Below are positions 26,293 to 46,364 of a stretch of DNA of 64,000 bases, piece by piece (position 1 is the stretch's first letter; every line of letters begins with the position of its first letter). The notes below the pieces were generated by a model. It searched no databases and was not told the origin of the DNA. It saw only the letters and a list, made by a program, of their open reading frames with translations. Location of the stretch: positions 173,916 to 237,915 of IMG/VR virus record IMGVR_UViG_3300043464_002284; one strand, given 5' to 3'. The translations under genes and the position numbers were made by a program.

Positions 26293-27267
26293 TCATAAAA
26301 CCACATCAACGAGATTATTGCCTAATCCTATGATTCTCTCTTTTGTTCCTAATGTATGTACTAAATATGGCGATTCAACATTTAAATTATATTCAACATT
26401 AGGTAGGCCATAGTTGTCTGCTAGTTCACAGTATGTAGATGCGTATTGTGGATTTTGTTGCATAAAAAGGTTGAGCTTGTCAATGCTTCCGTCAAAATTC
26501 CTGATATGTGCAACTGTATTTCTGTTAAATTCTGAATTTTCATATATTTTGTTTAAGCTATTATGAAAACCTATGGGTATTTCGGTATCTAAGGTGCTCC
26601 ATATTGTTCTCTGGTAGTTTCCCCATATCCATTGACTATAATTGACTGGCCCAAGTGAGGGCTGTAGAGTTGAAATAAATCCTACTCCATGATGAAATAT
26701 TTGGACATTTGTTGCTAAAGAATTAAATCCACAATAAGTAAGATAGGGTAAGATATCATCTATAGCTAATCTGTCTCTATGATAATTAAAGTTTTTTAGA
26801 ACATATTGGTATGCTCTTTTTTTGATTATATATGCCCACCCTCCAGTTGATTTGAAATTTTTTGATAAATGAGGAGATATTGGTATGCAGTGTTTTCTTC
26901 CATTAAATCCGAGCAATACAACATCCCAATCAGAATCAAGTAGATGACTACACAGTTCTGGCAAATATTCTCTCAGTGGCAAGACGTTGCTGTCAAATAA
27001 AACGCTAACATTATTATATAACTGAAAGTCATCTTCAAAAACACAAACACTTTCATACCCTCTTTCATCAGATATTTCAAGTGCTCTAAAGTGGCTTTTG
27101 GTTGCAGAAGCCTGATGTAGGGAGTCTTTGAGTGCTTCTAATCTTGTTAGTCCTTGTATTTCAAACTCATCTATTTGTTTTTCTACATTGGATAATCTGT
27201 CTATAGAACTAGGTAAGTTTATATAAAAAGCATGATCAGATAATACATTGTTGTGTAATGAAAACAT
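26293..27267 (-). CDS. Glycosyltransferase family 25-like
   Basis: FYINLPSSIDRL, SHFRAL, CVFEDD, GGWAYIIKK, AIDD. Confidence 0.85.
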   Translation of the reverse strand: MFSLHNNVLSDHAFYINLPSSIDRLSNVEKQIDEFEIQGLTRLEALKDSLHQASATKSHFRALEISDERGYESVCVFEDDFQLYNNVSVLFDSNVLPLREYLPELCSHLLDSDWDVVLLGFNGRKHCIPISPHLSKNFKSTGGWAYIIKKRAYQYVLKNFNYHRDRLAIDDILPYLTYCGFNSLATNVQIFHHGVGFISTLQPSLGPVNYSQWIWGNYQRTIWSTLDTEIPIGFHNSLNKIYENSEFNRNTVAHIRNFDGSIDKLNLFMQQNPQYASTYCELADNYGLPNVEYNLNVESPYLVHTLGTKERIIGLGNNLVDVVL

Positions 27268-27924
27268 TTAGTTATTCAAATAAAAGTTGTGTGATTTTCT
27301 AGTATTATAATTCCGTTCGTCTTCGTTGTTGAAATTCCAATTTTTATTTGCTGTTGGATCAGATATGACATAATTGTGAGTAAATATCTGATTTTGAATA
27401 TATTTGTGTTTACCTAAAATTTTAGCCACTTCCATGTACTCATTATCACAGTAGATGCTTTTATATGTAGGATTGTATATAAAATTAAATCTATCATAAT
27501 ATTTTTTAGTCATTATGCATCCTATGTCTAATCTTTCTTCCCAGCTAGGATTCATATAGTGTAAAGTTCCATCCATATCTGGATGATACTCAATCATATT
27601 TTTCACTATGATGTCATCGTAATCTTGAACTATAGGGAACAGATCGTCTGCGGCTAATATCAGTATATCGTAATCATTGGCATTATCCATATCGGCATTT
27701 ATTGCTTCAATTTTATTGCTTGATGTTCCATAATAGTATTCTATATTGGATTTGTTATTCAGGTAGTTTTTTATTTCTTCTGAGTTCATGCTCTCGTCAT
27801 CAGTATCAAATGAACATATAAATTTAAGAGTGTGTTTATGTGATTGCTTATCTATATACTCTGATAATACTTGTTTAAATTTTTCTGGACGACCCCTAGA
27901 AGGGAATTTTATTAAGATTTTCAT
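27268..27924 (-). CDS. GT-A fold (GT2-like) glycosyltransferase
   Basis: LIKFPSRGRPE, SFDTDD, AINAD, LAADDLFP, YCDNE. Confidence 0.75.
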   Translation of the reverse strand: MKILIKFPSRGRPEKFKQVLSEYIDKQSHKHTLKFICSFDTDDESMNSEEIKNYLNNKSNIEYYYGTSSNKIEAINADMDNANDYDILILAADDLFPIVQDYDDIIVKNMIEYHPDMDGTLHYMNPSWEERLDIGCIMTKKYYDRFNFIYNPTYKSIYCDNEYMEVAKILGKHKYIQNQIFTHNYVISDPTANKNWNFNNEDERNYNTRKSHNFYLNN

Positions 27925-28496
27925 AGTCTTTTACTTTCTGTTTTTTGTGCCAATGATGTCCAGCCATTGGTTCCTGTATTTTTGATTATTTTATAGTGGT
28001 TGTTTTCTAGATAATTATACACATTAGATTTTAAATGTAGATTTTCAAAATATATATTCAGGATATTAAATCGGCTAAAATCAATTGTTTGTATTATTCC
28101 ATCATCTAGGCCCTCTGTATCAATAAATAATATATCTATAGTATTAATATTATATCTATCAAATAGACCGTTTATTGTTTGACATGCTATCTTTTTTTCT
28201 ATAATGCCGTCTTCATCATATCCGTGTTTCAGTATGTGGCTTTTGTCTAAAGATGCAACCTCATACAAAGGTCCATCATTTTTGTGATAATAAAAGCTTG
28301 TTTCTGTTGCATCATTCTTTATTGATACTGCTATGTTTTCTATATGTTTATTTTTGATATGACTATAGCATTTCTCTATGTCTGAATTATGAAAGTCTAA
28401 TGGTTCGACTAAAACAAGTAAGTCAATATCTTTGTTTTTAATGATTTCCGTTAGGTCATCATTTCCTTTACAAACGCCTAGCTGAAATATTTTCAT
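27921..28496 (-). CDS. FkbM family methyltransferase
   Basis: QLGVCKGND, LVEP, IDILFIDTEGLD, IYFE. Confidence 0.85.
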   Translation of the reverse strand: MKIFQLGVCKGNDDLTEIIKNKDIDLLVLVEPLDFHNSDIEKCYSHIKNKHIENIAVSIKNDATETSFYYHKNDGPLYEVASLDKSHILKHGYDEDGIIEKKIACQTINGLFDRYNINTIDILFIDTEGLDDGIIQTIDFSRFNILNIYFENLHLKSNVYNYLENNHYKIIKNTGTNGWTSLAQKTESKRL

Positions 28497-29368
28497 ACAA
28501 ATTCCTTGACTAATTTTATAAATTCAGACGCTCTATTTTGGTAGCTGTGATTTTTTATTACTTTATTGTATCCAGATTCAGCGATTTGTTTTGTCAGTCT
28601 TAGGTCGTTAATCAACATATTTGCTTTGTATGTTAAGTCTTGCATATTATGATATATGACAATATCTTCCATATCAATAAACAGTTTATCAATATTTTCT
28701 GTGTGGTTTGTTAATAGTGCCGTTTTACACGCTAGTGTCTCGAATACTCTGTAGTTTATATCTTTGCTTATTGTTTTGTTTAGATGTATATCATAGGTAT
28801 TAATAGCAGACACCATGTCGTAACCTATATGCCAAACATCTTTTTGTATATTTATATCTAGATTTTTTTCTAATTCCTTTATGAGAGATTCTCTTTCTGG
28901 AAAAAGAGTACCACAAAATCCTATGTTGTATAATTTATTTGCTTTAAAAATTGGTTGAATTAAATCAGTATCTACAGCGTTAGGAAAATAATATGTTTTA
29001 GCTCCCAGAGCAGAAAAATGTTCTTGATCAGATTCTATTGAGCATAGAACGCCGTCTATTTTATGCTTTTGAACAGTTACCTTGTGAGCATTTAAATTAC
29101 AGTGAGAATCTATGCTCCAAAAAAATTTAGGTATTTTTATAGAAGATAGATCTGGTACCCAAGACGTTGTGTCGTAATTTTCTAGTAACAATACAGCATC
29201 ATGAGATGTGACTAAATCTTGAATATTGCTGGGGTGGTTGGGGTAGTTAAGACCCCAAACTGTACAGGAGTCACCATTTTTTTCAAAAGCTCTTTGAAGA
29301 CTCAGTGATTCTCTAAATAATTGATTTTTTTCGTGCCGACCCTTTTCTTGAATAATTAGTATTTTCAT
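28493..29368 (-). CDS. CgeB-like GT-B glycosyltransferase
   Basis: GFCGT...R, INYRVFETLAC...LLT, DIVIY, HSYQNRA. Confidence 0.85.
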   Translation of the reverse strand: MKILIIQEKGRHEKNQLFRESLSLQRAFEKNGDSCTVWGLNYPNHPSNIQDLVTSHDAVLLLENYDTTSWVPDLSSIKIPKFFWSIDSHCNLNAHKVTVQKHKIDGVLCSIESDQEHFSALGAKTYYFPNAVDTDLIQPIFKANKLYNIGFCGTLFPERESLIKELEKNLDINIQKDVWHIGYDMVSAINTYDIHLNKTISKDINYRVFETLACKTALLTNHTENIDKLFIDMEDIVIYHNMQDLTYKANMLINDLRLTKQIAESGYNKVIKNHSYQNRASEFIKLVKEFV

Positions 29369-29379: not shown

Positions 29380-29991
29380 TTATTGTGGTATAAAAAATGT
29401 ATTACCAGAAGTTTTTGCATATTCTTTATAGTTTATGCTTTTAATAAAATCAATCAGAACGTATGTTTCCATGCTGTGTTCTACGCAAACAAGAGATGGT
29501 CTATTTTTAGTCCAGTCATTTGATGATAATACCTCCATATCCACACCTTCTGCATCTACACTTAAAAAGTCTACTAAATTATTATTTATGATACTATTTA
29601 GTGTTTTTGTTTGCGTTTTCACTGGATGATATTCAAACTTATCTCCGTGTTTTGATATCACTCTATTTTTAAAAGATTCAGAAATAGTAGAAACACAGGC
29701 ATCCTGTCCAGTAGAATACATAAAAAAATCGACTTCAGTTTCTTTATTTAAACAGGCGTTATTTAGTATAGTTATTTGATCATTATTACCATATAGTGAT
29801 TTTAGTGTTTCAAAAAAAACAGGGTGTGGTTCTACCAGAATTCCTCTCCAATTATATTGTTCTACTAAATATCTTGTATTAGAATAAGTAATCCCATCCA
29901 TTGCTCCTATATCCACAAAAAATCCATTTGTTTTCCCATTAAAAAATGGAATTATTATTGATTCCTCACCATATTGTGCATAAAATGACAT
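29380..29991 (-). CDS. FkbM family methyltransferase
   Basis: YAQYGEE, FVDIGAMDGITYSNT, GILVEP, DFLSVDAEG. Confidence 0.9.
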   Translation of the reverse strand: MSFYAQYGEESIIIPFFNGKTNGFFVDIGAMDGITYSNTRYLVEQYNWRGILVEPHPVFFETLKSLYGNNDQITILNNACLNKETEVDFFMYSTGQDACVSTISESFKNRVISKHGDKFEYHPVKTQTKTLNSIINNNLVDFLSVDAEGVDMEVLSSNDWTKNRPSLVCVEHSMETYVLIDFIKSINYKEYAKTSGNTFFIPQ

Positions 29992-30005: not shown

Positions 30006-30692
30006 TTATAACATTGTGTAGTGATCTGGGTGTCTATTATTATATTCGTCATATATTTCTCCAACAAATCCACTATTTGTTCTTTCTGTTGGAAATGACT
30101 TGCTTTGATTCTCATCCAAAAGACGATATGAATCATGAATAAAAGAATACTCTTTAACTTTAGGATAGACGTATTCTCTTAGAAAGTTTTGATCAACTTG
30201 CCAGAAATTACCGTCCTCTGGAACAACCATAGCAATCTCCAGCCTGTTTAGTAAATTATTCCTACATCCCCACATTCCTCCTAATATAGCGGTATTGTGA
30301 TAAGGATGATCTCTCATAATATGAAAATCTTTATCGGAAGCCAACCATTCAGCAACAGCGTCCCCTTCCCTACTGCTTAATCTACTGTCAGCATCACGAG
30401 AAAGCATAACGTCTATCTTTTCATCGAAAGCCGGAAGAAATCTCCAAAACATTCCGGTCCAATTCCCCGGCTGATCCATAAAAATCAACTCAGTATTATC
30501 TATTCTTCTAAGAACGGCTACAGTAGATGATGGAACAGACTGACCTAGATAAACAATGGTTTTCCAGTCAGGGTATATTTGTAATCTCAGTTTAGCATTT
30601 TCTATTACCCCAATATTATATTTGGGATGATTTCCCCATAGACTGAAACATACTGCTTTGGTCATAGGTTTCCCGTGATTCTCTCGCACCAT
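30006..30692 (-). CDS. GT-A-like putative glycosyltransferase; start probably MTKAVCFSLWG (30664)
   Basis: FSLWG..PKY, GMFWRF, SRDADSR (DxD), FHIMRDHPYH, ILGGMWG. Confidence 0.6.
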   Translation of the reverse strand: MVRENHGKPMTKAVCFSLWGNHPKYNIGVIENAKLRLQIYPDWKTIVYLGQSVPSSTVAVLRRIDNTELIFMDQPGNWTGMFWRFLPAFDEKIDVMLSRDADSRLSSREGDAVAEWLASDKDFHIMRDHPYHNTAILGGMWGCRNNLLNRLEIAMVVPEDGNFWQVDQNFLREYVYPKVKEYSFIHDSYRLLDENQSKSFPTERTNSGFVGEIYDEYNNRHPDHYTML

Positions 30693-31936
30693 CCTTTTGA
30701 TTTGCTATAAGGCCACACAACCCAGTATTTGGGTTTAATATCAGTAGAGAATTCTCTCCAAATTTTACAGTATTTATCAGGGTCATTTTTCATCATATTG
30801 ATTTCATTGTCGTCTGCATCTTTTCGGAATAGGGTATTATCGTGCTCATCGTGGAATGCAACTACCCAGAAATCATAATCGGTTTCTGGAACCCTTTCGT
30901 ATCCAACATCTATACAATGTTTGAAAATCTTTAACAGAGCAATATCAAATTCTTCGTCAGAAGCATTTTGTAAAAGATCAGGAGGAGCTTTATGGTCTAA
31001 TACGTGTCTCTGGATAGCTCTTTTACCGAATGATAGTCCAGAATATTTTTCATAATCTCTTAGTGATCTAACTTTTCCAAATCCATAGGGTCCGAAATCA
31101 ATATCTCTTTTTTCTCCATCCATTTCAAAGAGTTTTCTATTTCTCAGATGAGATTCGTTATTTCTATTGACCCAGATAGGATCGTCGTCCCATTGTTTTG
31201 TTCGTCCTTTTCTGGTATATTCATGCCAACAAACAACTTTATGAGGATGATATAAGTCATATCCCTGAGTATAGGCTCTGGCTGCTATGCTTATTTCTTC
31301 TCCATGAAAATAATAATTAGGATCATGCTTTACTTCTTTGCAAAATTCTCCGACAGTAAAAGCAAAATGAGCACTATAAAATCTAGCTGGTAAAGGCTTA
31401 GTTTTATCGTCCCATGAATCAAATGATGCAGGAAGAAAAAAGACAGCTCCTTCTGGTATAAATCTATCAAAATTCATTTTCCATGGTTCTTGAACCCTCG
31501 CGGCTGGATCGTTATCTGGATCAAAACTGGGGATATAAGCCGTTAATAGGGGTTTGGGACTTCCGTTTTTTTGTAGTTCGGTTATCATTTCTATTAATGT
31601 TTCATCCCAATCTTGAACAAATCTATGATGACTATCGAGTTGTAGAGTATATTTTTCTCCTTGATATAATGCCTGAACAGCATTTCTGGCCCAGCATACA
31701 CCCTTGGACTCTTTGTAGTTTACGTCTAGGATTCTAAATCTTGAATCGTTTTTATATTCAGATATATCATCCCAATCATCTCCGTCTTTATGTTGCCATG
31801 CTATCCCGATCCTTAAATTTTCTGGATATTTAGCTTTCTCTATCATGTCCTTGAGAGTGGGGGATAGTTGAGGATCTCTATAAGCGGCTATTTGTACAAA
31901 AATTGTATTAGTTTTCTCTTCGCTCATGGGCTTCAT
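30662..31936 (-). CDS. GT60-like GlcNAc transferase (Skp1 hydroxyproline GlcNAc-transferase Gnt1 family)
   Basis: IFVQIAAYRDPQL, GVCWAR, LQLDSHHRF..WDETL, KPLLTAY, SAHFAF, FHGEE..IAARAYTQGYDLYHP, HEY. Confidence 0.85.
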   Translation of the reverse strand: MKPMSEEKTNTIFVQIAAYRDPQLSPTLKDMIEKAKYPENLRIGIAWQHKDGDDWDDISEYKNDSRFRILDVNYKESKGVCWARNAVQALYQGEKYTLQLDSHHRFVQDWDETLIEMITELQKNGSPKPLLTAYIPSFDPDNDPAARVQEPWKMNFDRFIPEGAVFFLPASFDSWDDKTKPLPARFYSAHFAFTVGEFCKEVKHDPNYYFHGEEISIAARAYTQGYDLYHPHKVVCWHEYTRKGRTKQWDDDPIWVNRNNESHLRNRKLFEMDGEKRDIDFGPYGFGKVRSLRDYEKYSGLSFGKRAIQRHVLDHKAPPDLLQNASDEEFDIALLKIFKHCIDVGYERVPETDYDFWVVAFHDEHDNTLFRKDADDNEINMMKNDPDKYCKIWREFSTDIKPKYWVVWPYSKSKGWCERITGNL

Positions 31937-33560: not shown

Positions 33561-33604
33561 TGATATGGATTAGTTATAAAGAGGTTATCTGCCCGGCCTG
33601 CATA

Positions 33605-33684: not shown

Positions 33685-33735
33685 AATATTGGTTGTCGGT
33701 TTGAAAATTAATACGATTTTTTTAGCGAAAAGGCA

Positions 33736-33933: not shown

Positions 33934-33935
33934 TC

Positions 33936-34407: not shown

Positions 34408-34419
34408 TGGAGACCAATA

Positions 34420-39100: not shown

Positions 39101-39930
39101 GCAATCGTTTACTATATATATATCAGAAAGAGAGAGTATTAAAAGTCTATCATGGGGCAGAAGTCTATGAATCCAGAGGTATAATACTTGAAAAGATGAT
39201 AAAAGAAGCAGCAGAGTCTCAGGAGATAAATCAAAACTATAGATTTTTGATTAACACAGATGACTCCCCAATACAACATAATATTAATGGCATATCCTGT
39301 TATTCTTTTAGCACAATAACAAAAGACTACGATCATTGCTGTCCGTGTTATATTTTTCATAGCTGGCCCGAAGTAGGTATCGACAACTATTCTCGTCTGA
39401 CGGATTCCTTTATCGACTCTGAACCAGAATCATCAAAAGTTGGATGGATAGGACATCCAATGAGTATACCAAGAAAAATATTTAACGCTTATTATTCTAA
39501 CACATATTTTAGTCAAAGCCTAATTAATGATTGGAATAGATCAGACCCAAAACAACTACATATTCACACTAAAACATATTTGACTTTTCAGCAACAAATA
39601 GACAAATGGAAATACCTGATAGACTTCGAAGGAGCAGGATATTCTGGCAGAACTAAAATTTTATTAAATTCTCCTAGAATTGTTTTCTTTGTGGATCGAG
39701 AATATCAAGAATTTTGGCAGAAAAAATTAATACCCTGGAAACATTATGTTCCAGTTAAAAAAGACCTATCTGATCTGGAAGAAAACTACTCTAAAATAGA
39801 AAAAGATAAAGATTTACAACGATATATTAAAAATGAACAAAAACAATTTTGTCAAGAAAATCTTTTATACAAACACGCTATCCTTGAACTACAAAGAATA
39901 ATTAAAGAAAATATATATGTTGAAAGCTAA
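39097..39930 (+). CDS. GT90 / CAP10 domain glycosyltransferase
   Basis: KWKYLIDFEGAGYSGR, EFW...LIPWKHYVPVKKDLSDL. Confidence 0.85.
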   Translation: MSNRLLYIYQKERVLKVYHGAEVYESRGIILEKMIKEAAESQEINQNYRFLINTDDSPIQHNINGISCYSFSTITKDYDHCCPCYIFHSWPEVGIDNYSRLTDSFIDSEPESSKVGWIGHPMSIPRKIFNAYYSNTYFSQSLINDWNRSDPKQLHIHTKTYLTFQQQIDKWKYLIDFEGAGYSGRTKILLNSPRIVFFVDREYQEFWQKKLIPWKHYVPVKKDLSDLEENYSKIEKDKDLQRYIKNEQKQFCQENLLYKHAILELQRIIKENIYVES

Positions 39931-40930
39931 AATTATAGGTTGTGGACTAAGTGGTGTAACATCAGCAATTATCCTCAAAGAACGAGGATATGATGTGGAA
40001 ATATTTGATAGTAGAAGTCATATAGCCGGAAATTGTTATGACACAAAAGAAAATGATGTAACTGTACACAAGTACGGAGCACATATATTCCACACAAACG
40101 ATGAAGAGGTTTGGAGATTTTTAAATAGATACACATCTTTTAATTCTTATTCACACAAAGTAAGAGCTAATACTGACTATGGTTTAATTTCTATTCCCTA
40201 TAACTACCTTACACGCGATCAGATAGGAAAAGATTTAAGTCCGGAAGAAATACAGAAAACTATTTTTGTTGACTATTCTGAAAGACACTGGGGTATACCG
40301 TGGAAAGATCTGCCAAAATCTATTTCCTCAAGATTACCAAATAAGAGAGAGAACTATGACGATAGATACTTTACAGATAAATATCAAGGTATTCCATCTC
40401 TTGGATATACTTCTATGTTTTCAAATATGCTGGATGGTATAAAAGTAAATCTAGATGTACCAAAAAACCTTTACAAAAAAATTCTTAGAGATAACAATTA
40501 TGACATATTAGTATATACAGGCAAGCCAGATGATTATTTTGAATATTGTTATGGAGAACTAGAATATAGATCTCTCAAATTTGAGCATACTATCGCACCA
40601 AAGAATGGTCTATTTTCTTGGGAAAACGGGGCAGTAATTAATGAATGCAATAAATTATTATATAACAGAACTGTTGATAACTCTGTATTTTTAAATGAAG
40701 AAGTTAATCATACAGTATACACACGAGACTATCCAGAAGAACACAATAGCACCAACGACCCTATCTATCCCAAAAATTTTGGAAGTCACAACGATAAATA
40801 TAGCTTATATAACAGGCTGATGCATCAACAGAATAAAACAATATTTGTTGGAAGATTAGCTACTTATAAATATCTTGATATGTGGATGGCTATTAAACAA
40901 GTTTTTCAAAAACTAGAATTTAATATATGA
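39917..40930 (+). CDS. glf: UDP-galactopyranose mutase
   Basis: GCGLSG, HIAGNCYD, HKYGAHIFHT, WG, YFTDKYQGIP, LEYRSL, YTR, GRLATYKYLDM. Confidence 0.95.
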   Translation: MLKAKIIGCGLSGVTSAIILKERGYDVEIFDSRSHIAGNCYDTKENDVTVHKYGAHIFHTNDEEVWRFLNRYTSFNSYSHKVRANTDYGLISIPYNYLTRDQIGKDLSPEEIQKTIFVDYSERHWGIPWKDLPKSISSRLPNKRENYDDRYFTDKYQGIPSLGYTSMFSNMLDGIKVNLDVPKNLYKKILRDNNYDILVYTGKPDDYFEYCYGELEYRSLKFEHTIAPKNGLFSWENGAVINECNKLLYNRTVDNSVFLNEEVNHTVYTRDYPEEHNSTNDPIYPKNFGSHNDKYSLYNRLMHQQNKTIFVGRLATYKYLDMWMAIKQVFQKLEFNI

Positions 40931-40943: not shown

Positions 40944-42251
40944 TTAAAAATTATTCCTTTCATAAAAACACATATATTCTTGATGTCCAATATTTCTGTA
41001 CTTGTTATTTATCTCATCAAAATGAGAATAAAACTTATACAAAAACTTATACATATCAGATACAGAAGCAATAAAAATATTATCTATACCCATTACAGGA
41101 TTATTAGAAATAAACTTTATCCTTTCTCCGTCTGTAGATAAATGCAGAGGAGTATTTTGATTTATAAAATCTATAATTTGGTGTTTTTTCAAAGGAAAAG
41201 GATTAGATAATATGTCAAATCGGAATTGTATAACTTTCTCGTTAGGATCGGTATTGTTATATAGATATTCTGCTATTTTTGCTTTACCGTATAACATATT
41301 TTTAAAACCTTTAACTGGGCACCTAGTACTACCAACAAATCCATCAAGATCACCTAATAGTTCTATATTGTTATCATCGTCTATTATAACATGTTTTATC
41401 TTAGCAGAAATATGCTCTCCAAAATAATTTCTAATGACGTTCTCATCAATCATAGAGTAGTCGTTGCTCATAGCTCGGTAACTAAGACTATTCTGTACAA
41501 TATTCCAAGAATGCACGTATATATTAACATCAAAGCTGCAAGAAATATCATCAATCAAATCCTTTAAATCTTTATTCAAAAAAGAATTTCTAATATGTCC
41601 TCTTAAAATAATATTTAATTTAGGTTTTGCAAAAGGAACTATAGGTAAGAAAGTAGCATCTGATAAAAATAGAGCACCCTCATCTTTTTCGTCTACTCTT
41701 AGAAAACCGCTTTGATGTCTTAAATATTTATTAGAATTAACAAGCTTTAAAGATATATGCCAAAAATTATACAAACCATTAACAACACTAAAATTTGCTA
41801 CTTCAGATAAATTAGATGTTAATGTAATTTTATTTTGACTATCAACAGAAAAAAATAAACCAGGATATTCTACAGACTCCAACTGAACATATTGGTCACC
41901 ACTAACGTCAGTTACTGGAATAAACCTAAACTGAAAAGCTTGATGAACATAATGAGTTAACTTAAAATCAGTTTTTTTAAATTTAAAATGCAAATTACTA
42001 GCACATATATATGAATTATATGTTGTATGACATTGTAGAATTAGCGGATCATACAACTTTAATTTACCTGGAACTACTAAAGACCCAACAGGAAAATAAA
42101 TGTCATTTGAATTAGTTTCTTTTGTCATATCCTTTTTTTCTATTTCTGGCTTTTTTTTTACATCGAGATTGGTTGTCTTAATTGTTTTTTTATTCCACCA
42201 TAAAAACATATAATAGATCTTTTTTATAAAAACGTTATGAATCAATATCAT
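40944..42251 (-). CDS. AbfB/CBM42-like beta-trefoil fused to a C-terminal GT-like domain
   Basis: LESVEYPG, KYLRHQSGFLRV...LFLSDATF (AbfB repeats); C-terminal IILRGHIR, VYVHSW, RFD. Confidence 0.7.
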   Translation of the reverse strand: MILIHNVFIKKIYYMFLWWNKKTIKTTNLDVKKKPEIEKKDMTKETNSNDIYFPVGSLVVPGKLKLYDPLILQCHTTYNSYICASNLHFKFKKTDFKLTHYVHQAFQFRFIPVTDVSGDQYVQLESVEYPGLFFSVDSQNKITLTSNLSEVANFSVVNGLYNFWHISLKLVNSNKYLRHQSGFLRVDEKDEGALFLSDATFLPIVPFAKPKLNIILRGHIRNSFLNKDLKDLIDDISCSFDVNIYVHSWNIVQNSLSYRAMSNDYSMIDENVIRNYFGEHISAKIKHVIIDDDNNIELLGDLDGFVGSTRCPVKGFKNMLYGKAKIAEYLYNNTDPNEKVIQFRFDILSNPFPLKKHQIIDFINQNTPLHLSTDGERIKFISNNPVMGIDNIFIASVSDMYKFLYKFYSHFDEINNKYRNIGHQEYMCFYERNNF

Positions 42252-42345: not shown

Positions 42346-42876
42346 ATGAATAGGTTGGAGAATCAAAGAGTTTATTTAGCAGGGGCAATGGACAGAGTGG
42401 CTGATCGTGGTGCTACTTGGAGAGACAATATTACTCCATTTTTGACCGAAATGGGCATAGTAGTTTTTAATCCAATAAGCAAACCAACAGATGTAGGCTT
42501 GGAAGATCAAGATACACATACCATCAAAACCAAGCTTAAAGAAAAAGGCAGATACGACGAACTTTCTGCTATGATGAAAATGATTCGATCCGTAGATCTA
42601 AGATTAGTCGATATTAGTGATTTTATGATAGTTAATTTAGACCTTAATGTACATCCTTGTGGTACACTGGAAGAAATTTTTTGGGCTAACCGACAAAAAA
42701 AACCTATCATAGTACATATGGTTCAAGGTAAAAACCAAACGCCAGACTGGCTATTTGGAACAATCCCTCACCAACTAATTTTCTCAACATGGGAAGAAAT
42801 ACAGTCTTATTTGATACATATTCATTCTGCCGAAAACATAGACACTCACAAAAGATGGTATTTTTTTTCAGTATAA
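42346..42876 (+). CDS. Nucleoside 2-deoxyribosyltransferase-like protein
   Basis: RVYLAGAM, WR, VFNP, DLRLVDISDF, GTLEE...A....KP. Confidence 0.8.
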   Translation: MNRLENQRVYLAGAMDRVADRGATWRDNITPFLTEMGIVVFNPISKPTDVGLEDQDTHTIKTKLKEKGRYDELSAMMKMIRSVDLRLVDISDFMIVNLDLNVHPCGTLEEIFWANRQKKPIIVHMVQGKNQTPDWLFGTIPHQLIFSTWEEIQSYLIHIHSAENIDTHKRWYFFSV

Positions 42877-42890
42877 TTTAAGTAGACCAT

Positions 42891-43091
42891 ATGCCCAAAT
42901 ACTATGTTCAGTCTGGACAGATTAAGACAGTAATAGATAGACTAAATCATAAAACAGCAATACTAGATGTTTTACGAGAGCATAGAGGCAAAGGTATGCT
43001 AACTGTTGAAAAAATATGCTTAAGCGAAACCGGATGGACTGCGGACTTAAAATGTTATGATGTTGACCCTTATTTAAAACTAATACAATGA
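42891..43091 (+). CDS. Hypothetical protein
   Basis: Operonic packing. Confidence 0.6.
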   Translation: MPKYYVQSGQIKTVIDRLNHKTAILDVLREHRGKGMLTVEKICLSETGWTADLKCYDVDPYLKLIQ

Positions 43092-43492
43092 TTCAAACAA
43101 TATTTCAAATACAAGACAATATTATTGTTGGGGACTCTAAAATTCACGGTCGTGGAGTTTTTGCTACCAAAGACATACCAGAAGGCACCGTAATAGAAAA
43201 GTGTCCAATGTTAAAACTAGATTTCCCATCAAAATATCATGCTGATCTTAAAGTTCTAGACTACGCCTTTGCTAGACCATCTGAAGCAAATTGGCAGGAC
43301 CACGGATGGGATCTTTATTTGATGATGGGATACGGGATGATGTATAATCATCAAGATATTCCTAACTCATCCATTTCTTTCGATTATGAAAAGAATATAG
43401 CCCAGATAACCGCAACACAATATATTAAAGAAAATTCAGAAATCTACATATCATACGGACCAATGTATTTCCTCAACAAAAAGAAGATATAA
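43088..43492 (+). CDS. SET domain protein (putative lysine methyltransferase)
   Basis: SKIHGRGVFATKDIPEG, MMYNHQDIPN, EIYISYG. Confidence 0.9.
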   Translation: MIQTIFQIQDNIIVGDSKIHGRGVFATKDIPEGTVIEKCPMLKLDFPSKYHADLKVLDYAFARPSEANWQDHGWDLYLMMGYGMMYNHQDIPNSSISFDYEKNIAQITATQYIKENSEIYISYGPMYFLNKKKI

Positions 43493-43496
43493 TACT

Positions 43497-44180
43497 ATGA
43501 ATACAAATAAAATATACGATAAAGTTTTTAATGAAGTCATAATAGCAATTAAAGACGAATACATAACAAAGATAGGAGGAGAAGAGTATGTGGCTAACAA
43601 CCATCATCAGGCTTCGACTCAAGCACACGATGGTTCTATCAAACAAATAGATATCCAACACCTACCACAACTAATCAATAAAAAAATTAGAAACTACCTA
43701 GAAATAGGATCCTATATAGGGGTGAGTTTTAGAATACTTAATGAAATTTTCAGTCCGGATGTTTGTTATTCTGTAGACCCTAACATACCACACAGGGTCT
43801 TTGCAAAACCCAGGAATGTTTTTAGAAAGCTTAATAGTAGCTATTTAAATAAAACAACTTTGCTTGATGCTTATTGGGTACAAGGAGGAAGTCCCACAAT
43901 AGATTCATCATATTTTACTCAATTAGGAATTCAGTTTGATCTTATTTTTATAGATGCTATGCACACATACGAATCTGTAAAATCTGATTTTTTTGAAGCA
44001 ATAAAAATCTTGTCCCCTGATGGTTTAGTATTATTGCATGACGTATACACTTGGCCAGAGGTTGGGCAATTTGTTGAGGAATTAGCATCAGACGATACGT
44101 ATATTATCAAGTACTCTCCTAAAGATGTTGCTATAGACGGATTTTGTACCATAGGCATAAATTATGCAAAAAATAATTAA
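43497..44180 (+). CDS. Class I SAM-dependent methyltransferase (Methyltransf_24-like)
   Basis: YLEIGSYIG, FDLIFIDAMHTYESVKSD, LSPDGLVLLHD. Confidence 0.9.
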   Translation: MNTNKIYDKVFNEVIIAIKDEYITKIGGEEYVANNHHQASTQAHDGSIKQIDIQHLPQLINKKIRNYLEIGSYIGVSFRILNEIFSPDVCYSVDPNIPHRVFAKPRNVFRKLNSSYLNKTTLLDAYWVQGGSPTIDSSYFTQLGIQFDLIFIDAMHTYESVKSDFFEAIKILSPDGLVLLHDVYTWPEVGQFVEELASDDTYIIKYSPKDVAIDGFCTIGINYAKNN

Positions 44181-45294
44181 TGAAATCAAGTTAGATTTTG
44201 ACGATGTCTTAATAAGACCAAAGAGATCAACACTCTCAAGTAGATCAGAAGTTAATCTAATTAGAGACTTCCACTTCAAGAATTCTCCAAGAAAAATTTC
44301 CGCTATACCAGTAGTAGTGGCTAATATGGATACTACCGGAACATTCCGTATGGCGAACGTGGTTTGTGAGAATCAAGCCATGGTGGCATTACACAAACAC
44401 TATAAACCAGAACAACTAATAGAATATTATTGTAGCAGTACTAATGATCATAAAGAACTAACGTTTTATTCCACAGGAACATCGTCTTCAGATATTGAAA
44501 AACTTACATATGTTTTCAATGCCATAAAAAATAAAGGATGTCTACTACCCAATATCTGTGTTGATGTTGCTAATGGATATAGTGAAAAATTTGTAAAAAC
44601 AGTAGCTCACATCAGAAAACTATATGAAGAAATAGTAATAATGGCCGGTAATGTCGTCACACCAGAAATGGTGGAAGAGCTTATTTTACATGGTAGGGTC
44701 GATATAGTAAAAGTTGGCATAGGACCAGGGTCGGTTTGTACTACCAGATTAAAAACGGGCGTAGGATACGCACAAATATCAGCTTGTTTGGAATGTTCGG
44801 ACGCTGCTCATGGTCTTGGTGGACACATTTGTGGAGATGGTGGATGTAAACACGTTGGAGATATTTGTAAAGTTTTTGGTAGTAATGCTGATTTTGTAAT
44901 GTGTGGAAACTTTTTCGCTGGATGTGAAGAATGCGAAGGAGAATGGGAATACGAATATCAGGCTGGAGTCGGCGTGGCATTAGCAGAGCCATTCTGGCAA
45001 CCATTTGATCCTGGGACTGGCGGCCCCAAAAGAAAGAAGAACCTAAAATTTTATGGAATGAGTAGCAAAGAAGCTATGGAAAAACATAATAATGGAGTTG
45101 CTAACTATAGAACAAGCGAAGGAAGATGCGTTACGGTTCCATATAAAGGACATGTTGAAGATGTTTTACTAGATATCTTTGGCGGACTAAGAAGCGCATG
45201 TACATACATTGGAGCATCTAAAATGAAAGATTTTGGTAAAAAAACCACATTCGTAATGGTCAACAATACTCATACAAAGACGTACGACAAATGA
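44164..45294 (+). CDS. guaC: GMP reductase
   Basis: LDFDDVLIRPKRS, ANMDT, ICVDVANGY, MAGNV, VGIGPGSVCTTR, CGDGG, FYGMSS, YRTSEG, GGLRSACTYIG. Confidence 0.95.
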   Translation: MQKIINEIKLDFDDVLIRPKRSTLSSRSEVNLIRDFHFKNSPRKISAIPVVVANMDTTGTFRMANVVCENQAMVALHKHYKPEQLIEYYCSSTNDHKELTFYSTGTSSSDIEKLTYVFNAIKNKGCLLPNICVDVANGYSEKFVKTVAHIRKLYEEIVIMAGNVVTPEMVEELILHGRVDIVKVGIGPGSVCTTRLKTGVGYAQISACLECSDAAHGLGGHICGDGGCKHVGDICKVFGSNADFVMCGNFFAGCEECEGEWEYEYQAGVGVALAEPFWQPFDPGTGGPKRKKNLKFYGMSSKEAMEKHNNGVANYRTSEGRCVTVPYKGHVEDVLLDIFGGLRSACTYIGASKMKDFGKKTTFVMVNNTHTKTYDK

Positions 45295-46364
45295 CAAAAA
45301 TCAACCTATCTTGTCCAATTAACCAAACTGGTTATGGTATTTCATCTTTAAATATTCTCAAAGAGTTAATTCAAATATCTGAATTAAGTTATTTGCCTAT
45401 CGGGCAACCTTCTGTTGGAACTCAAGAAGACTACAACATAATACAGTCACTCCTAAACAATCAAGATTTAGCAAATATTAATTCGCCATTTATCAAGATT
45501 TGGCACCAGTTCGATCTTGGTACTCGTTTTGGTCGTGGTAAATATTTTGCATTTCCCTTTTTTGAACTAGATACATTCAACACCAGAGAAAAGCAGCATC
45601 TATCTGTTCCAGATGTTTTATTTGCCACCTCTGAGTGGGCAAAAAACGTAATGACCAATAACGATATAACCACACCCATAGAAGTAATACCTCTGGGAGT
45701 TGATATGTCTATTTTTAATTATCTTGAAAACCCAAAACAGACTGACAAATACATATTTTTAAATATTGGTAAATGGGAAGTTAGAAAAGGTCACGATATT
45801 TTACATGAATTATTTAAAAAAGCTTTTCCAAATGAAACAGATGTAGAGTTATGGGTGCTGGCGTCAGAAACTACTAATTCTTATTCTAGTGAAGAACAAT
45901 TAGTTGAATGGAAAAACTTATATAGTAATGATAACAGAATTAAAATATCTTCTGGAGTTACATCACAAAAAGAAATAGCTCAAATTATGTCGCAAGCTAG
46001 TTGTGGTATTTTTCCTTCCAGAGCAGAGGGATGGAATTTAGAACTATTGGAAATGATGGCCATGAATAAACCAGTTATAGCAACTAACTACTCCGCACAT
46101 ACCGAGTTTTGTGATAAAAATAATTCCTATTTAGTAGATATTGAAACAACAGAACCGGCTAATGATAAGAAGGCATTTTATGGTCAAGGCAATTGGGCTA
46201 AATTAGGCCAAAATCAACAAGATCAGATTATTGAACATATGAGATATGTTTATCAAAACAAGATTCTCACCAACACGTCGGGACTAACAACGGCTAAAAT
46301 CTTTTCTTGGAAAAATTCGGCCAGTAAAATTTTGAGGTGTATACAAGAGTATACAGGAGAATAA
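45291..46364 (+). CDS. GT4 glycosyltransferase
   Basis: TGYG, FLNIGKWEVRKG, PSRAEGWNLELLEMMAMNKPVIATN, FSW. Confidence 0.9.
   Translation: MTKINLSCPINQTGYGISSLNILKELIQISELSYLPIGQPSVGTQEDYNIIQSLLNNQDLANINSPFIKIWHQFDLGTRFGRGKYFAFPFFELDTFNTREKQHLSVPDVLFATSEWAKNVMTNNDITTPIEVIPLGVDMSIFNYLENPKQTDKYIFLNIGKWEVRKGHDILHELFKKAFPNETDVELWVLASETTNSYSSEEQLVEWKNLYSNDNRIKISSGVTSQKEIAQIMSQASCGIFPSRAEGWNLELLEMMAMNKPVIATNYSAHTEFCDKNNSYLVDIETTEPANDKKAFYGQGNWAKLGQNQQDQIIEHMRYVYQNKILTNTSGLTTAKIFSWKNSASKILRCIQEYTGE

What the first reader, a model, noticed from the sequence alone, without database searches (positions are those of the whole stretch)
26293..46364. 20-kb phage glycosylation island, likely building a virion glycan coat
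About 12 GT-like ORFs (GT25, GT2-like, CgeB, GT60, HtrL+GT-A, two GT4, GT90, several GT-A-like), UDP-Galp mutase, an SDR epimerase, three methyltransferases and a 2OG oxygenase are arranged around a divergent promoter pair. No Wzx/Wzy/ABC exporter or polyprenyl-phosphate priming transferase is visible, which favours cytoplasmic protein acceptors over capsule or LPS. The window also encodes cytoplasmic mucin-like TP-repeat proteins (61894, 63063) and PT/PG-rich fibres. Virion glycosylation is known in some mycobacteriophages and giant viruses, but a pathway this large in a putative Planctomycete phage looks undescribed.
Basis: partly seen in the sequence, partly recalled or inferred. Interest (0 to 1): 0.8.

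Follow-up and report, generated by a model that had tools for sequence, protein, structure and literature searches.

The report
Phage mucin-type protein glycosylation island
A lake-water jumbo phage carries a real cluster of about a dozen sugar-transferring enzymes, built around a conserved enzyme of the type that starts mucin-like sugar coats on threonine/proline-rich proteins in protists, and it most likely sugar-coats the phage's own threonine-proline repeat proteins, which has not yet been shown directly.

Summary
Window 26293-46364 is packed with soluble glycosyltransferases (11 ORFs, 12 GT domains) and sugar-tailoring enzymes in two divergent arms.

It is a composite, not one 20-kb pathway:
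- A conserved two-gene core: a GT60 polypeptide-type HexNAc transferase (30662-31936) and a tandem GT-A enzyme (31908-33560).
- Two hypervariable tailoring cassettes (25808-30692 and 34986-42251).
- A conserved nucleotide-metabolism block (42346-45294).
- A conserved GT4 (45291-46364).

The core pair occurs in over 100 IMG/VR jumbo-phage contigs and in cultured Xanthomonas/Stenotrophomonas phages. One of these, XacN1, has published Schiff-positive virion proteins.

Evidence for a protein acceptor:
- The GT60 has the DxH motif.
- Its 49 best PDB structural matches are all mucin-type ppGalNAc-transferases.
- In one subclade, TP-repeat protein genes directly flank the operon.
- A blind TP-repeat scan of IMG/VR recovered GT60 or its partner in 11 of 120 loci.

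Protein O-glycosylation of TP tracts is the best explanation (about 0.55). Rivals are host envelope remodelling, DNA glycosylation and host-protein modification. A Planctomycetota host is supported by one gene. Phage virion glycosylation is known; this variant is new.

The parts
25808..26224 (-). small ORF (138 aa) of unknown function at the outer edge of variable cassette A
   Evidence: No Pfam or PHROG match. Homologues in only 8 of 79 related loci.
26293..27267 (-). GT25-like glycosyltransferase (cassette A)
   Evidence: Atlas feature score 0.96 to PF01755 clusters, structural TM 0.58/0.87. Weak PHROG glucosyltransferase match. Found in 11 of 79 loci.
27268..27924 (-). small glycosyltransferase (cassette A)
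   Evidence: phrog_14945 glycosyltransferase, 3.2e-11. Found in 4 of 79 loci.
27921..28496 (-). FkbM-family methyltransferase (probable sugar O-methylase)
   Evidence: PF05050, 1.9e-10.
28493..29368 (-). CgeB-like GT-B glycosyltransferase
   Evidence: PF13524 Glyco_trans_1_2, 1.9e-22.
29380..29991 (-). second FkbM-family methyltransferase
   Evidence: PF05050, 1.4e-19.
30006..30692 (-). GT-A-like hexosyltransferase; overlaps the GT60 gene by 31 nt
   Evidence: Atlas: phage 'hexosyltransferase' clusters at 0.99; structure of the top hit resembles GT2/GT8. DAD motif at residues 100-102. Found in 18 of 79 loci.
30662..31936 (-). conserved core gene 1: GT60 polypeptide-type retaining HexNAc transferase, with its own C-terminal beta domain (about residues 335-424)
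   Evidence: PF11397, 3.9e-76. DSH (DxH) motif at residues 101-103, invariant in 29 sequences. AF2 pLDDT 92. Top 49 PDB fold matches are all GT27 ppGalNAc-transferases. At least 105 IMG/VR relatives. 6953 proteins at E<=1e-5.
31908..33560 (-). conserved core gene 2: tandem GT-A enzyme (HtrL_YibB-like N-domain 1-275, second GT-A domain 294-550 with invariant EDD 384-386)
   Evidence: PF09612, 3.1e-15. Found in 67 of 79 loci. 40% identical over full length to XacN1 ORF330. AF2 pLDDT 88. Fold hits are LH3, LARGE1, K4CP, ColGalT1 and PmHS2. Invariant residues.
33561..33935 (.). divergent intergenic region between the two arms
   Evidence: 375-bp gap. Sigma70-like sites: 33657-33684 (+), 33633-33605 (-), 33705-33677 (-). 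These are not more than chance region-wide.
33936..34971 (+). three conserved backbone ORFs (84 aa, 82 aa, and a 183-aa phosphatase-like protein) facing the core pair
   Evidence: Found in 25-27 of 79 loci. 34420 matches phrog_335 'phosphatase', 1.4e-19.
34986..35648 (+). short SDR (epimerase/reductase-like), cassette B
   Evidence: PF01370, 9.4e-08. GGTxxxG and YxxxK motifs present. Found in 1 other locus.
35626..36534 (+). 2OG-Fe(II) oxygenase of the protein-hydroxylase type (P4H/OGFOD1-like), accessory
   Evidence: PF13661 1.6e-06, PF13640 4.2e-05. OGFOD1 at 0.04 in PDB. HKD at residues 133-135. No TET/JBP match. Present in only one other locus, L003.
36772..37521 (+). glycosyltransferase (PHROG family)
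   Evidence: phrog_1579, 1.4e-08.
37518..38432 (+). weak GT-B/GT4-like ORF
   Evidence: PF00534 at 8.4e-04, below cutoff. VpsD at 2.5e-05, below cutoff.
38429..39100 (+). GT-A-like ORF
   Evidence: Atlas structural TM 0.72-0.81 to GT8/GT2 clusters. No Pfam match.
39097..39930 (+). GT90 glycosyltransferase (POGLUT-like)
   Evidence: PF05686, 1.2e-18. PDB hits: POGLUT1 7.5e-12, Rumi, POGLUT2.
39917..40930 (+). UDP-galactopyranose mutase (supplies UDP-Galf)
   Evidence: PF03275, 4e-47. TIGR00031 at 251 bits, below the 304-bit equivalog cutoff.
40944..42251 (-). CBM42/AbfB (furanose-binding beta-trefoil) domain protein
   Evidence: PF05270, 1.4e-10. PDB 3kmv, 3.4e-08.
42346..45294 (+). not glycan machinery: NDT-like protein, SET-domain protein, Methyltransf_24, GMP reductase. 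42346 and 44164 are conserved backbone.
   Evidence: GMP reductase NF003470 at 461.6 bits vs cutoff 397. 42346 and 44164 conserved in 13-17 loci.
45291..46364 (+). GT4 glycosyltransferase, conserved backbone
   Evidence: PF13692 7.8e-15, PF00534 6.2e-14, GT4-conflict 3.3e-08. Found in 11 loci, limited by flank length.
51960..54334 (+). fibre-like protein with a C-terminal Pro/Gly tail (51960-53348) and a protein with two TP linkers (53354-54334): candidate acceptors
   Evidence: Translations. Weak Phage_tail_C match. TP scan.
61894..63051 (+). mucin-like TP-repeat protein (about 230 aa of TPTxTPT; no signal peptide): prime candidate acceptor
   Evidence: T 27%, P 13%. 207 TP-rich windows. Non-repeat domain found only in the closest relative.
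63063..64000 (+). second TP-repeat protein (PPPGG tract plus TP repeats), truncated by the contig end
   Evidence: The window end is the contig end.

Best explanation
The island is a phage-encoded cytoplasmic protein O-glycosylation system.

Proposed steps:
1. The conserved GT60 enzyme transfers a HexNAc (probably GlcNAc) from a UDP-sugar onto Thr (possibly Ser, or hydroxy-Pro) in the TP-repeat, mucin-like tracts of phage proteins. This happens while they are still in the host cytoplasm.
2. The conserved tandem GT-A partner adds the next one or two sugars, or polymerises a disaccharide.
3. The genes of the two hypervariable cassettes finish the glycan. In this phage these are GT25-like, GT-A-like, CgeB-like, GT90 and GT4-like transferases, a UDP-Galf supply, FkbM O-methylases, an SDR and a 2OG hydroxylase.
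4. Because the cassettes differ from phage to phage, related phages would display different glycans. This resembles O-antigen diversification.

What is shown: gene content, conservation pattern, enzyme family, fold and motif, soluble nature, and synteny with TP-protein genes in relatives.

What is inferred: donor sugar, acceptor residue, order of steps, and that the glycoproteins end up on the virion.
For: 1. GT60 identity.
- PF11397 at 3.9e-76.
- Conserved DxH motif, which characterises GT27/GT60 (PMC7185993).
- Top 49 PDB fold matches are all mucin-type ppGalNAc-Ts.
- Characterised GT60 enzymes start mucin-type O-glycans on Thr-rich tracts. In T. cruzi these are then extended with Gal and Galf (PMC8724618, PMC9472816). 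The island encodes a UDP-Galp mutase.

2. Conservation pattern.
- GT60 and the tandem GT-A are the only island genes conserved across relatives: 79/79 by construction, and 67/79.
- The intervening and flanking cassettes hold 325 ORFs in 111 families, dominated by FkbM, GT25, GT10, GT34, GT2, GT8, GT15, carbamoyl-, TylF- and cytidylyl-transferases.

3. Linkage to TP-repeat proteins.
- In the subclade where the tandem GT-A lies downstream of GT60, 11 of 27 unique loci have a co-oriented TP-repeat gene ending within 400 bp upstream of the operon. 7 of 27 have one starting right after it.
- A scan of IMG/VR for TP-repeat DNA, blind to GT60, returned 120 loci. 11 of them carry GT60 and/or its partner. 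In at least six the TP tract lies 0.5-1.5 kb away. Distant GT60 homologues of 26-41% identity are included.

4. Cultured relatives.
- XacN1 carries GT60 (49.5% identity) and the tandem GT-A (40% identity).
- Its virions show at least two Schiff-positive protein bands (PMC5852040).
- Its DNA is cut by BssHII, NaeI and SpeI.
- It encodes TP-rich ORF350 and a TP segment in the 3313-aa baseplate-adjacent ORF325. That segment is also present in Xoo-sp13.

5. No island gene has a TM segment.

6. Other island families have protein-glycosylating members: GT90/POGLUT and a P4H/OGFOD1-like oxygenase.
Against: - No direct evidence that any TP protein is glycosylated or is in the virion.
- The Schiff-positive XacN1 bands were not assigned to proteins.
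- In the window's own clade, TP genes are not adjacent to the core. The nearest in the window is 20 kb away, and 8 of 29 clade loci have one within 10 kb.
- TP-gene density in this lineage is about 0.04 per kb. Mere presence within 10 kb is therefore expected by chance.
- The adjacent cases are related phages, so they are not independent events.
- The XacN1 ORF350 homologues in Xoo-sp13 and RAS14 lack the TP tract.
- HtrL_YibB, GT25 and Glf are typical of LOS/LPS outer-core loci (PMC4172580).
- Prokaryotic GT60 members have no characterised acceptor.
- TP tracts can be plain linkers.
Confidence: 0.55

Rival explanations
1. Host envelope remodelling. The soluble GTs act on host undecaprenyl-linked LPS, LOS or capsule intermediates and use host flippases. 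This changes the infected cell's surface, for example to exclude superinfecting phages.
For: - Polymorphic GT clusters in jumbo cyanophages were read this way by Iyer et al. (PMC7824862) and for S-SCSM2R (PMC12801897).
- HtrL_YibB, GT25 and Glf occur together in A. baumannii LOS outer-core loci (PMC4172580).
- O-antigen GTs are normally soluble or peripheral, so the absence of TM proteins does not exclude this.
- Cassette hypervariability is what surface-glycan loci show.
Against: - The conserved, most constrained enzyme is of the polypeptide-type GT60/GT27 kind. It is not a lipid-linked-sugar GT.
- TP-protein genes sit in the operon in one subclade.
- XacN1 virion proteins stain as glycoproteins.
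- No priming transferase, flippase, polymerase or ligase is present in the window.
Confidence: 0.17
2. Glycosylation of a protein other than virion TP proteins: a host protein (takeover or anti-defence) or a single conserved non-structural phage protein. This would be analogous to Skp1 Hyp-glycosylation or to bacterial effector GTs.
For: - GT60 is very strongly conserved: median 67.5% identity, and 170 of 424 positions at 90% or more. That would fit one conserved target.
- A 2OG protein-hydroxylase-like gene lies in the island.
- GT60 domains are fused to a 2OG hydroxylase-like domain in a metagenomic giant protein.
- Promoter-like sites are sigma70-type, which would fit early or middle expression.
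Against: - A single-site modification does not need up to 12 GT domains and cassettes that differ between close relatives.
- The 2OG oxygenase is present in only one other locus.
- TP-gene synteny.
- The Schiff-positive material is in purified virions.
Confidence: 0.12
3. DNA hypermodification. The GTs decorate hydroxylated bases in phage DNA to block restriction, with Galf supplied by the mutase.
For: - Phage DNA glycans can be complex (bioRxiv 10.1101/2023.12.21.572611).
- Pootjesviridae use a phage UDP-Gal mutase for DNA glycosylation (PMC13326640).
- The C-domain of 31908 weakly matches a PHROG of T-even beta-glucosyl-HMC alpha-glucosyltransferase (7.2e-04).
- NDT-like, GMP reductase and 'GT4-conflict' genes lie nearby.
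Against: - No thymidylate-synthase-like hydroxymethylase, C5-methyltransferase or TET/JBP gene was found among the 80 window ORFs scanned with Pfam, nor among the 25 most frequent families listed for relatives' cassettes.
- The 2OG oxygenase matches P4H/OGFOD1-type families, not TET_JBP.
- XacN1 DNA is digested by BssHII, NaeI and SpeI.
- The GT60 fold neighbours are peptide GTs, not T4 BGT, JGT or TarP.
- Only 64 kb of the 238-kb genome was inspected.
Confidence: 0.06
4. The island makes a free, lipid-linked or small-molecule glycoconjugate (secondary metabolite or storage/osmolyte oligosaccharide), and the TP tracts are plain linkers.
For: Carbamoyltransferase, TylF and FkbM methylases, and sugar kinase/cytidylyltransferase genes in relatives' cassettes also occur in natural-product glycosylation. 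Iyer et al. raise a metabolite reading for a second cyanophage cluster.
Against: - No aglycone-building genes (PKS, NRPS, terpene) were seen in the window or among the 25 most frequent families listed for the cassettes.
- GT60 family and fold.
- TP synteny.
Confidence: 0.05

Closest known systems
Protist mucin-type O-GlcNAc initiation by GT60 pp-alphaGlcNAc-transferases (Dictyostelium; T. cruzi TcOGNT), and the related animal GT27 ppGalNAc-Ts
   Same: - Same Pfam/CAZy family signature and DxH motif.
- Nearest solved folds are ppGalNAc-Ts.
- Candidate acceptors are Thr/Pro-rich repeats.
- A UDP-Galf supply is present, as in T. cruzi mucin glycans, which carry Galf on the GlcNAc (PMC9472816).
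   Different: - The phage enzyme is encoded by a bacteriophage and has no signal anchor, so it would work in the bacterial cytoplasm, not the Golgi.
- It has its own conserved C-terminal beta domain instead of the ricin lectin domain.
- It is partnered with a tandem GT-A enzyme and with swappable tailoring cassettes.
- Its activity and acceptor are untested.
Xanthomonas phage XacN1 (with Xoo-sp13 and Stenotrophomonas phages CM1 and RAS14)
   Same: - Carries the same core: GT60 at 49.5% identity and tandem GT-A at 40% identity, as one operon with tailoring genes between them.
- Virion proteins are Schiff-positive.
- TP-rich ORF350 and a TP segment in the giant baseplate-adjacent protein.
   Different: - Only about 3 tailoring genes (carbamoyltransferase plus two ORFs), against about 16 here.
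- Gammaproteobacterial hosts and high-GC genomes.
- The authors suggested phage GTs make the glycoproteins but did not identify the family, the partner, the acceptors or the wider clade.
Mycobacteriophage virion glycosylation (Freeman et al. 2023, as summarised in PMC12619734)
   Same: Phage-encoded GTs glycosylate phage structural proteins in the host cytoplasm. The glycans shield the virion.
   Different: - There the glycans sit on C-termini of capsid and tail-tube subunits.
- There are few GTs and no GT60.
- No mucin-like TP repeats or hypervariable multi-gene cassettes are described.
- I could not read the primary paper.
Chlorovirus PBCV-1 capsid glycosylation and Megavirinae fibril glycosylation clusters (own knowledge; PBCV-1 cited in PMC5852040)
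   Same: - The virus encodes most of its own cytoplasmic glycosylation machinery, including multi-domain GTs and sugar methyltransferases.
- Clade-specific cluster content gives clade-specific glycans.
   Different: - These are eukaryotic giant viruses.
- PBCV-1 makes atypical N-linked glycans on the capsid protein.
- GT60 is not the initiating enzyme.
Polymorphic GT clusters of jumbo cyanophages (Iyer et al. 2021, PMC7824862; S-SCSM2R with 13 GTs, PMC12801897)
   Same: Many GT families plus sugar-nucleotide enzymes in large phages, with content that is polymorphic between relatives.
   Different: - Those clusters were interpreted as host outer-polysaccharide or DNA modification.
- No GT60/TP-repeat link was noted.
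- Their function is also untested.
Bifunctional tandem GT-A enzymes (LARGE1, K4CP chondroitin polymerase, PmHS2, LH3/ColGalT1)
   Same: The model of 31908-33560 has two GT-A domains. Its best PDB matches are these enzymes (E 4e-10 to 1e-6). The second domain has an invariant EDD motif.
   Different: - Whole-chain TM is only about 0.25, because domain packing differs.
- Sequence identity is about 10%.
- Polymerase activity is pure inference.

Membership tests
CAZy GT60 / Pfam PF11397 (polypeptide alpha-GlcNAc transferases) | Sequence match to the family model above its curated threshold | tested here: met
   257.2 bits vs gathering score 21, E 3.9e-76, covering profile positions 95-350 of 352.
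CAZy GT60 / Pfam PF11397 (polypeptide alpha-GlcNAc transferases) | DxH in place of the GT-A DxD metal-binding motif (shared with GT27; PMC7185993) | tested here: met
   D101-S102-H103 is invariant in a 29-sequence alignment and at least 90% conserved in 81 sequences.
CAZy GT60 / Pfam PF11397 (polypeptide alpha-GlcNAc transferases) | GT-A fold closest to the polypeptide GalNAc-transferases | tested here: met
   AF2 model pLDDT 92, pTM 0.88. Foldseek PDB ranks 1-49 are all ppGalNAc-Ts, best E 4.8e-10, TM about 0.5.
CAZy GT60 / Pfam PF11397 (polypeptide alpha-GlcNAc transferases) | Transfers GlcNAc from UDP-GlcNAc to Thr, Ser or Hyp of a polypeptide | not testable with these tools
   Needs an enzyme assay. 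Supported only indirectly, by TP-gene synteny and XacN1 glycoprotein staining.
Skp1-type hydroxyproline glycosylation (P4H + GT60 Gnt1) | A prolyl 4-hydroxylase is obligatorily paired with the GT60 enzyme | tested here: not met
   A 2OG oxygenase of the P4H/OGFOD1 type is present in the window. It has a homologue in only 1 of 79 related loci, whereas GT60 is in all. No Skp1 homologue was looked for.
Phage DNA sugar-hypermodification gene clusters (Pyle et al.; NAR 2026) | GT genes adjacent to a 5-methylpyrimidine dioxygenase plus C5-MT, or to a thymidylate-synthase-like hydroxymethylase or hydroxylase | tested here: not met
   None among the 80 window ORFs scanned with Pfam, nor among the 25 most frequent families listed for relatives' cassettes. 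The remaining 174 kb of the genome was not available.
Phage DNA sugar-hypermodification gene clusters (Pyle et al.; NAR 2026) | Virion DNA resistant to ordinary restriction enzymes | tested here: not met
   Literature only, and for the relative XacN1: its DNA was mapped with BssHII, NaeI and SpeI (PMC5852040). Not known for the window phage.
Wzx/Wzy- or ABC-dependent surface polysaccharide locus | Polyprenyl-phosphate priming transferase, flippase, polymerase or ABC exporter in the locus | tested here: not met
   No island gene has a hydrophobic 19-residue segment on its coding strand. The only multi-TM ORFs in the window are shadow frames and an 83-aa ORF at 14174.
Mycobacteriophage-type virion glycosylation | Glycans demonstrated on virion structural proteins and dependent on phage GT genes | not testable with these tools
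   Only Schiff staining of unassigned XacN1 virion bands exists.
Bifunctional tandem GT-A glycan polymerases (LARGE1/K4CP/PmHS2 type) | Two GT-A domains, each with an acidic metal/donor motif | tested here: inconclusive
   The two-domain model and its best fold hits fit. EDD 384-386 is invariant and D142 is invariant in the N-domain. The N-domain motif is not a canonical DxD, and whole-chain TM is only about 0.25.

The most novel reading that the evidence does not exclude
A large, globally recurring clade of jumbo phages runs a eukaryote-like mucin-type O-glycosylation pathway inside bacterial cells. The clade includes lake-water phages that probably infect Planctomycetota, and XacN1-like phages.

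- A GT60 enzyme primes Thr in TP-repeat tracts of phage proteins.
- A tandem GT-A enzyme extends or polymerises the chain.
- O-antigen-like swappable cassettes diversify it.

The result would be virions with a mucin- or proteoglycan-like coat whose composition is under diversifying selection. This would also make phages a reservoir, and a possible evolutionary source, of the GT60/GT27 polypeptide-glycosylating enzymes of eukaryotes.
Probability: 0.35. Interest if true: 0.85.

Novelty: new variant of a known kind. Interest (0 to 1): 0.72.

Why it matters
Phage virion glycosylation is known from only a few systems, and its genetic rules are unclear.

What this finding offers:
- A simple, testable rule: a GT60 initiator, a tandem GT-A extender and variable tailoring cassettes, acting on TP-repeat tracts.
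- The system is very common. It gives 6953 protein clusters at E<=1e-5 and recurs in lake metagenomes from 2016 to 2024.
- It has culturable members (XacN1, Xoo-sp13, RAS14, CM1) in which it can be knocked out.

If confirmed, it would:
- explain what many 'orphan' GT clusters in large phages do;
- add a glycan layer to phage-host and phage-grazer interactions in freshwater;
- provide soluble enzymes for cytoplasmic mucin-type O-glycosylation of tagged proteins in bacteria;
- bear on the origin of eukaryotic mucin-type glycosylation enzymes.

Tried and rejected
1. Sequence search of PDB with the GT60 protein found nothing at E<=1. The fold search was needed instead.
2. I tried to trace the window's two TP proteins across phages by their non-repeat domains. 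Only the closest relative has them. There is no homology to the TP family flanking the operon in other clades and no match in cultured phages. Co-occurrence therefore cannot be tested gene by gene. TP tracts sit in many unrelated proteins.
3. Pfam on ten TP proteins gave only a P_proprotein beta-sandwich domain in some. A structural role is not shown.
4. I considered that the GT90/POGLUT-like enzyme acts on the two Cys-rich proteins. Neither contains a C-x-S-x-[PA]-C site. Dropped.
5. The window's 2OG oxygenase has no BLASTP similarity to the hydroxylase-containing GT60 giant protein P0121. The fusion is only a loose lead, with an LH3-like domain at 3e-4.
6. The promoter scan gave sites no more frequent than in shuffles. 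No timing inference was made.
7. The XacN1 supplement does not say which proteins are Schiff-positive or list the virion proteome in text.
8. The XacN1 ORF350 homologues in Xoo-sp13 and RAS14 lack the TP tract. That gene is therefore not a conserved acceptor.
9. No RNA run was listed for the GT60 gene.
10. The Freeman 2023 primary paper is not held.
11. The 'moraphage' paper (PMC12619734) concerns a different lineage with predicted Bacteroidota hosts.

Full report
WHAT THE WINDOW IS

The window is the last 64 kb of IMG/VR contig IMGVR_UViG_3300043464_002284 (237,915 bp). Evidence that it is a tailed jumbo phage:
- rIIA (14491-17175) and rIIB (17272-18141).
- A ClpP-like head-maturation protease (49599-50273).
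- RuvB, an ATP-dependent ligase, endonuclease VII and a volactin-like actin.
- Two tRNAs and a tmRNA.

GC content is about 35%. The same sequence recurs in lake-water and freshwater metagenomes from 2016 to 2024.

The DUF1501 gene (3951-5195) is 63-80% identical at the protein level to genes on genuine bacterial contigs of Planctomycetota. Those contigs have 50-70% GC and carry no other phage gene. They include a complete Pirellulaceae chromosome.

CHECK OF THE OBSERVATION

ORF coordinates are as stated. Eight minus-strand genes (26293-33560) face a plus-strand arm (33936-46364) across a 375-bp gap.

Pfam, PHROGs, NCBIfam, PDB sequence searches and ESM-Atlas leads give 11 GT-like ORFs with 12 GT domains:
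- GT25-like: 26293.
- PHROG glycosyltransferases: 27268 and 36772.
- CgeB-like: 28493.
- GT-A-like: 30006 and 38429.
- GT60: 30662.
- HtrL plus a second GT-A domain: 31908.
- Weak GT4: 37518.
- GT90: 39097.
- GT4: 45291.

Tailoring and accessory genes:
- UDP-Galp mutase: 39917.
- A short SDR: 34986.
- A 2OG oxygenase: 35626.
- Two FkbM methyltransferases: 27921 and 29380.
- A class-I methyltransferase: 43497.
- A CBM42-domain protein: 40944.

The assignments for 26293, 30006, 38429 and 37518 rest on weak or lead-level evidence.

The stretch also contains genes that are not glycan enzymes: an NDT-like protein (42346), a SET-domain protein (43088) and a GMP reductase (44164, above the NCBIfam cutoff).

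None of the island genes has a transmembrane-like segment.

The TP-repeat proteins at 61894 and 63063, the TP-linker protein at 53354 and the PG-tailed fibre-like protein at 51960 are real.

Sigma70-like hexamers occur on both strands of the divergent gap. Such sites are no more frequent in the region than in shuffles.

ANATOMY FROM COMPARISON

The GT60 protein retrieves at least 105 IMG/VR loci at 58-82% identity, on contigs up to 334 kb. It retrieves 6953 proteins at E<=1e-5 in the 5.8-billion-protein collection and 4764 clusters at 50% identity.

I ran tblastn of every island ORF against 79 related loci of +/-10 kb. Only two island genes are generally conserved:
- GT60, with a median identity of 67.5%.
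- The 550-aa neighbour 31908-33560, found in 67 of 79 loci at a median of 62%.

In the window's clade the backbone order is:
1. RuvB, volactin, subtilase, trypsin-like protease.
2. Variable cassette A (window 25808-30692).
3. GT60 and the tandem GT-A.
4. Three small conserved ORFs.
5. Variable cassette B (window 34986-42251).
6. NDT-like, GMP reductase, GT4.

In a second clade and in cultured relatives the order is GT60, then 1.6-8.3 kb of variable genes, then the tandem GT-A, all on one strand.

The variable stretches of 67 unique loci hold 325 ORFs in 111 families. The commonest Pfam families are FkbM methyltransferases, GT25, Methyltransf_24, GT10, RXYLT1_C, GT34, GT2, GT8, GT15, carbamoyltransferase, TylF, PfkB kinase and cytidylyltransferase.

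So the '20-kb island' is a conserved two-gene core flanked by fast-turnover glycan-tailoring cassettes, plus an unrelated nucleotide block. This window has unusually large cassettes.

THE TWO CORE ENZYMES

The GT60 protein:
- It matches PF11397 at 3.9e-76.
- It has an invariant D101-S102-H103. DxH replacing DxD is the hallmark of GT27 and GT60 (PMC7185993).
- Its AlphaFold model (pLDDT 92) has ppGalNAc-transferases as its 49 best PDB neighbours. These are the enzymes that initiate animal mucin-type O-glycans.
- It carries its own conserved C-terminal beta domain where those enzymes carry a lectin domain.

Characterised GT60 enzymes are polypeptide alpha-GlcNAc transferases that start mucin-type glycans on Thr-rich tracts in Dictyostelium and T. 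cruzi. In T. cruzi the GlcNAc is extended by Gal and Galf (PMC8724618, PMC9472816).

The partner protein (31908-33560):
- Its model has pLDDT 88.
- It has two GT-A domains.
- Its best PDB matches are two-domain enzymes: LH3, LARGE1, K4CP, ColGalT1 and PmHS2.
- EDD 384-386 is invariant.

LINK TO TP-REPEAT PROTEINS

TP-repeat ORFs are common in this lineage, at about 0.04 per kb. Presence within 10 kb of GT60 therefore means little by itself.

The placement is not random, however. In the clade with the GT60...GT-A operon:
- 11 of 27 unique loci have a co-oriented TP-repeat gene ending within 400 bp upstream of GT60 (gaps of about 40-70 bp where I read them).
- 7 of 27 have one starting just after the tandem GT-A.
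- 19 of these TP proteins form one family.

These loci are related, so the synteny is inherited and these are not independent events.

As a reciprocal test I scanned IMG/VR for DNA encoding TPTxTPTxTPTxTPT, blind to GT60. The scan was truncated at 120 loci. Eleven of those loci contain GT60 and/or the tandem GT-A within the few kb fetched. In at least six the TP tract lies 0.5-1.5 kb away. Three GT60 homologues of only 26-41% identity are among them.

Under the most conservative null, every one of the 120 loci belongs to a GT60 genome and TP genes are placed at random. Adjacency within 1.5 kb would then be expected in about 1% of loci. I observed about 5-6%.

CULTURED RELATIVES

XacN1, Xoo-sp13, CM1 and RAS14 are the only 4 of 50,697 phage records with the GT60 gene.

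In XacN1 the operon is ORF334 (GT60), ORF333 (carbamoyltransferase), ORF332, ORF331 and ORF330. ORF330 is a full-length homologue of the tandem GT-A at 40% identity.

The XacN1 paper reports:
- At least two Schiff-positive bands in purified virions. The authors suggest phage GTs make them (PMC5852040).
- DNA mapped with BssHII, NaeI and SpeI.

XacN1 encodes a strongly TP-rich ORF350 next to structural genes. It also has a TP segment in the 3313-aa protein next to the baseplate wedge, and that segment is conserved in Xoo-sp13. The ORF350 homologues of Xoo-sp13 and RAS14 lack the TP tract.

INTERPRETATION

The best-supported reading is cytoplasmic O-glycosylation of TP tracts in phage proteins. 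GT60 initiates, the tandem GT-A extends, and the cassette enzymes finish the glycan. Cassette turnover generates glycan diversity between phages.

In this window the cassettes would add Galf (mutase), O-methyl groups (FkbM) and several hexoses. The P4H-like oxygenase might hydroxylate prolines in the same tracts, but it is accessory (one other locus).

That the products coat the virion is inferred from three things:
- The XacN1 staining.
- The position of TP genes in the window's putative morphogenesis region (49-64 kb), which holds the head protease and a weak tail-tip match.
- The XacN1 TP proteins lying next to structural and baseplate genes.

RIVALS

Host-envelope remodelling is the main rival. 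HtrL, GT25 and Glf are LOS-type families (PMC4172580). Earlier authors read polymorphic GT clusters in jumbo phages this way (PMC7824862). The soluble nature of the GTs does not exclude it.

DNA glycosylation is unlikely:
- No base-hydroxymethylating or TET-type gene was found in the window or among the listed cassette families.
- XacN1 DNA is restrictable.
- The GT60 fold is of the peptide-GT type.

However, 174 kb of this genome was not seen.

A single non-virion protein target and a non-protein glycoconjugate are minor rivals.

NOVELTY

I found no paper linking GT60 to phages or describing a mucin-type, TP-repeat-directed glycosylation system in phages.

Already known:
- Virion glycosylation in mycobacteriophages, chloroviruses and mimiviruses.
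- GT-rich clusters in cyanophages.
- The XacN1 staining result.

I therefore rate this a new variant of a known kind. The next steps are clear and experimentally accessible in culturable relatives.

Noticed in passing
window 3049-3403 (+); 2223-2295 (+); 11600-11675 (+): A phage-encoded tmRNA (Rfam RF00023, 91.5 bits), tRNA-Ile(UAU) and tRNA-Leu(UAA). Both tRNAs read A-ending codons. This fits a 35% GC phage in a much higher-GC host.
   Followed up: no
window 3951-5195 (+): The DUF1501 gene is 63-80% identical in protein sequence to genes on genuine 50-70% GC Planctomycetota contigs, including a complete Pirellulaceae chromosome. It looks like a host-derived auxiliary gene and is the only host clue.
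   Followed up: partly
window 57887-58798 and 58817-61876 (+): Two very Cys-rich proteins (303 aa with 39 Cys; 1019 aa with 142 Cys). CC doublets are enriched (35 vs 20 in shuffles). No Pfam, PHROG or cultured-phage match. They lie just upstream of the TP-repeat genes. In relatives, TP tracts and Cys-rich segments occur in the same ORF (e.g. L050 1176-4115).
   Followed up: partly
window 22747-23751 (+): A volactin-like actin homologue (PF25216, 2.7e-62). It is the most conserved gene near the island, with 83% median identity among relatives.
   Followed up: no
window 24110-25833 (+): A subtilase and a trypsin-like protease are conserved side by side next to variable cassette A in most relatives. 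The trypsin-like protease has an N-terminal hydrophobic segment.
   Followed up: no
window 42346-48676 (+): A conserved block of non-glycan auxiliary genes: NDT-like protein, SET-domain protein, GMP reductase, ferritin-like protein and a sigma-70 region-4 protein.
   Followed up: partly
P0121 (metagenomic protein, 2461 aa), P0123, P0124: GT60-like domains occur up to four times in giant metagenomic proteins. P0121 also has a peroxiredoxin-like domain and a 2OG hydroxylase-like domain (LH3, 3e-4). This hints at a hydroxylase-GT60 functional link.
   Followed up: partly
window 9721-10526 and 11148-12644: Two long stretches (806 and 1497 bp) have no ORF of 100 aa or more. The second holds the tRNA-Leu. 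The rest is unexplained.
   Followed up: no
L013-L016, L022, L026 (about 16-20 kb in locus coordinates): In several relatives of the window's own clade, one to three TP-repeat genes are inserted between the homologues of window genes 23752 and 22747 (volactin). The window has none there.
   Followed up: no
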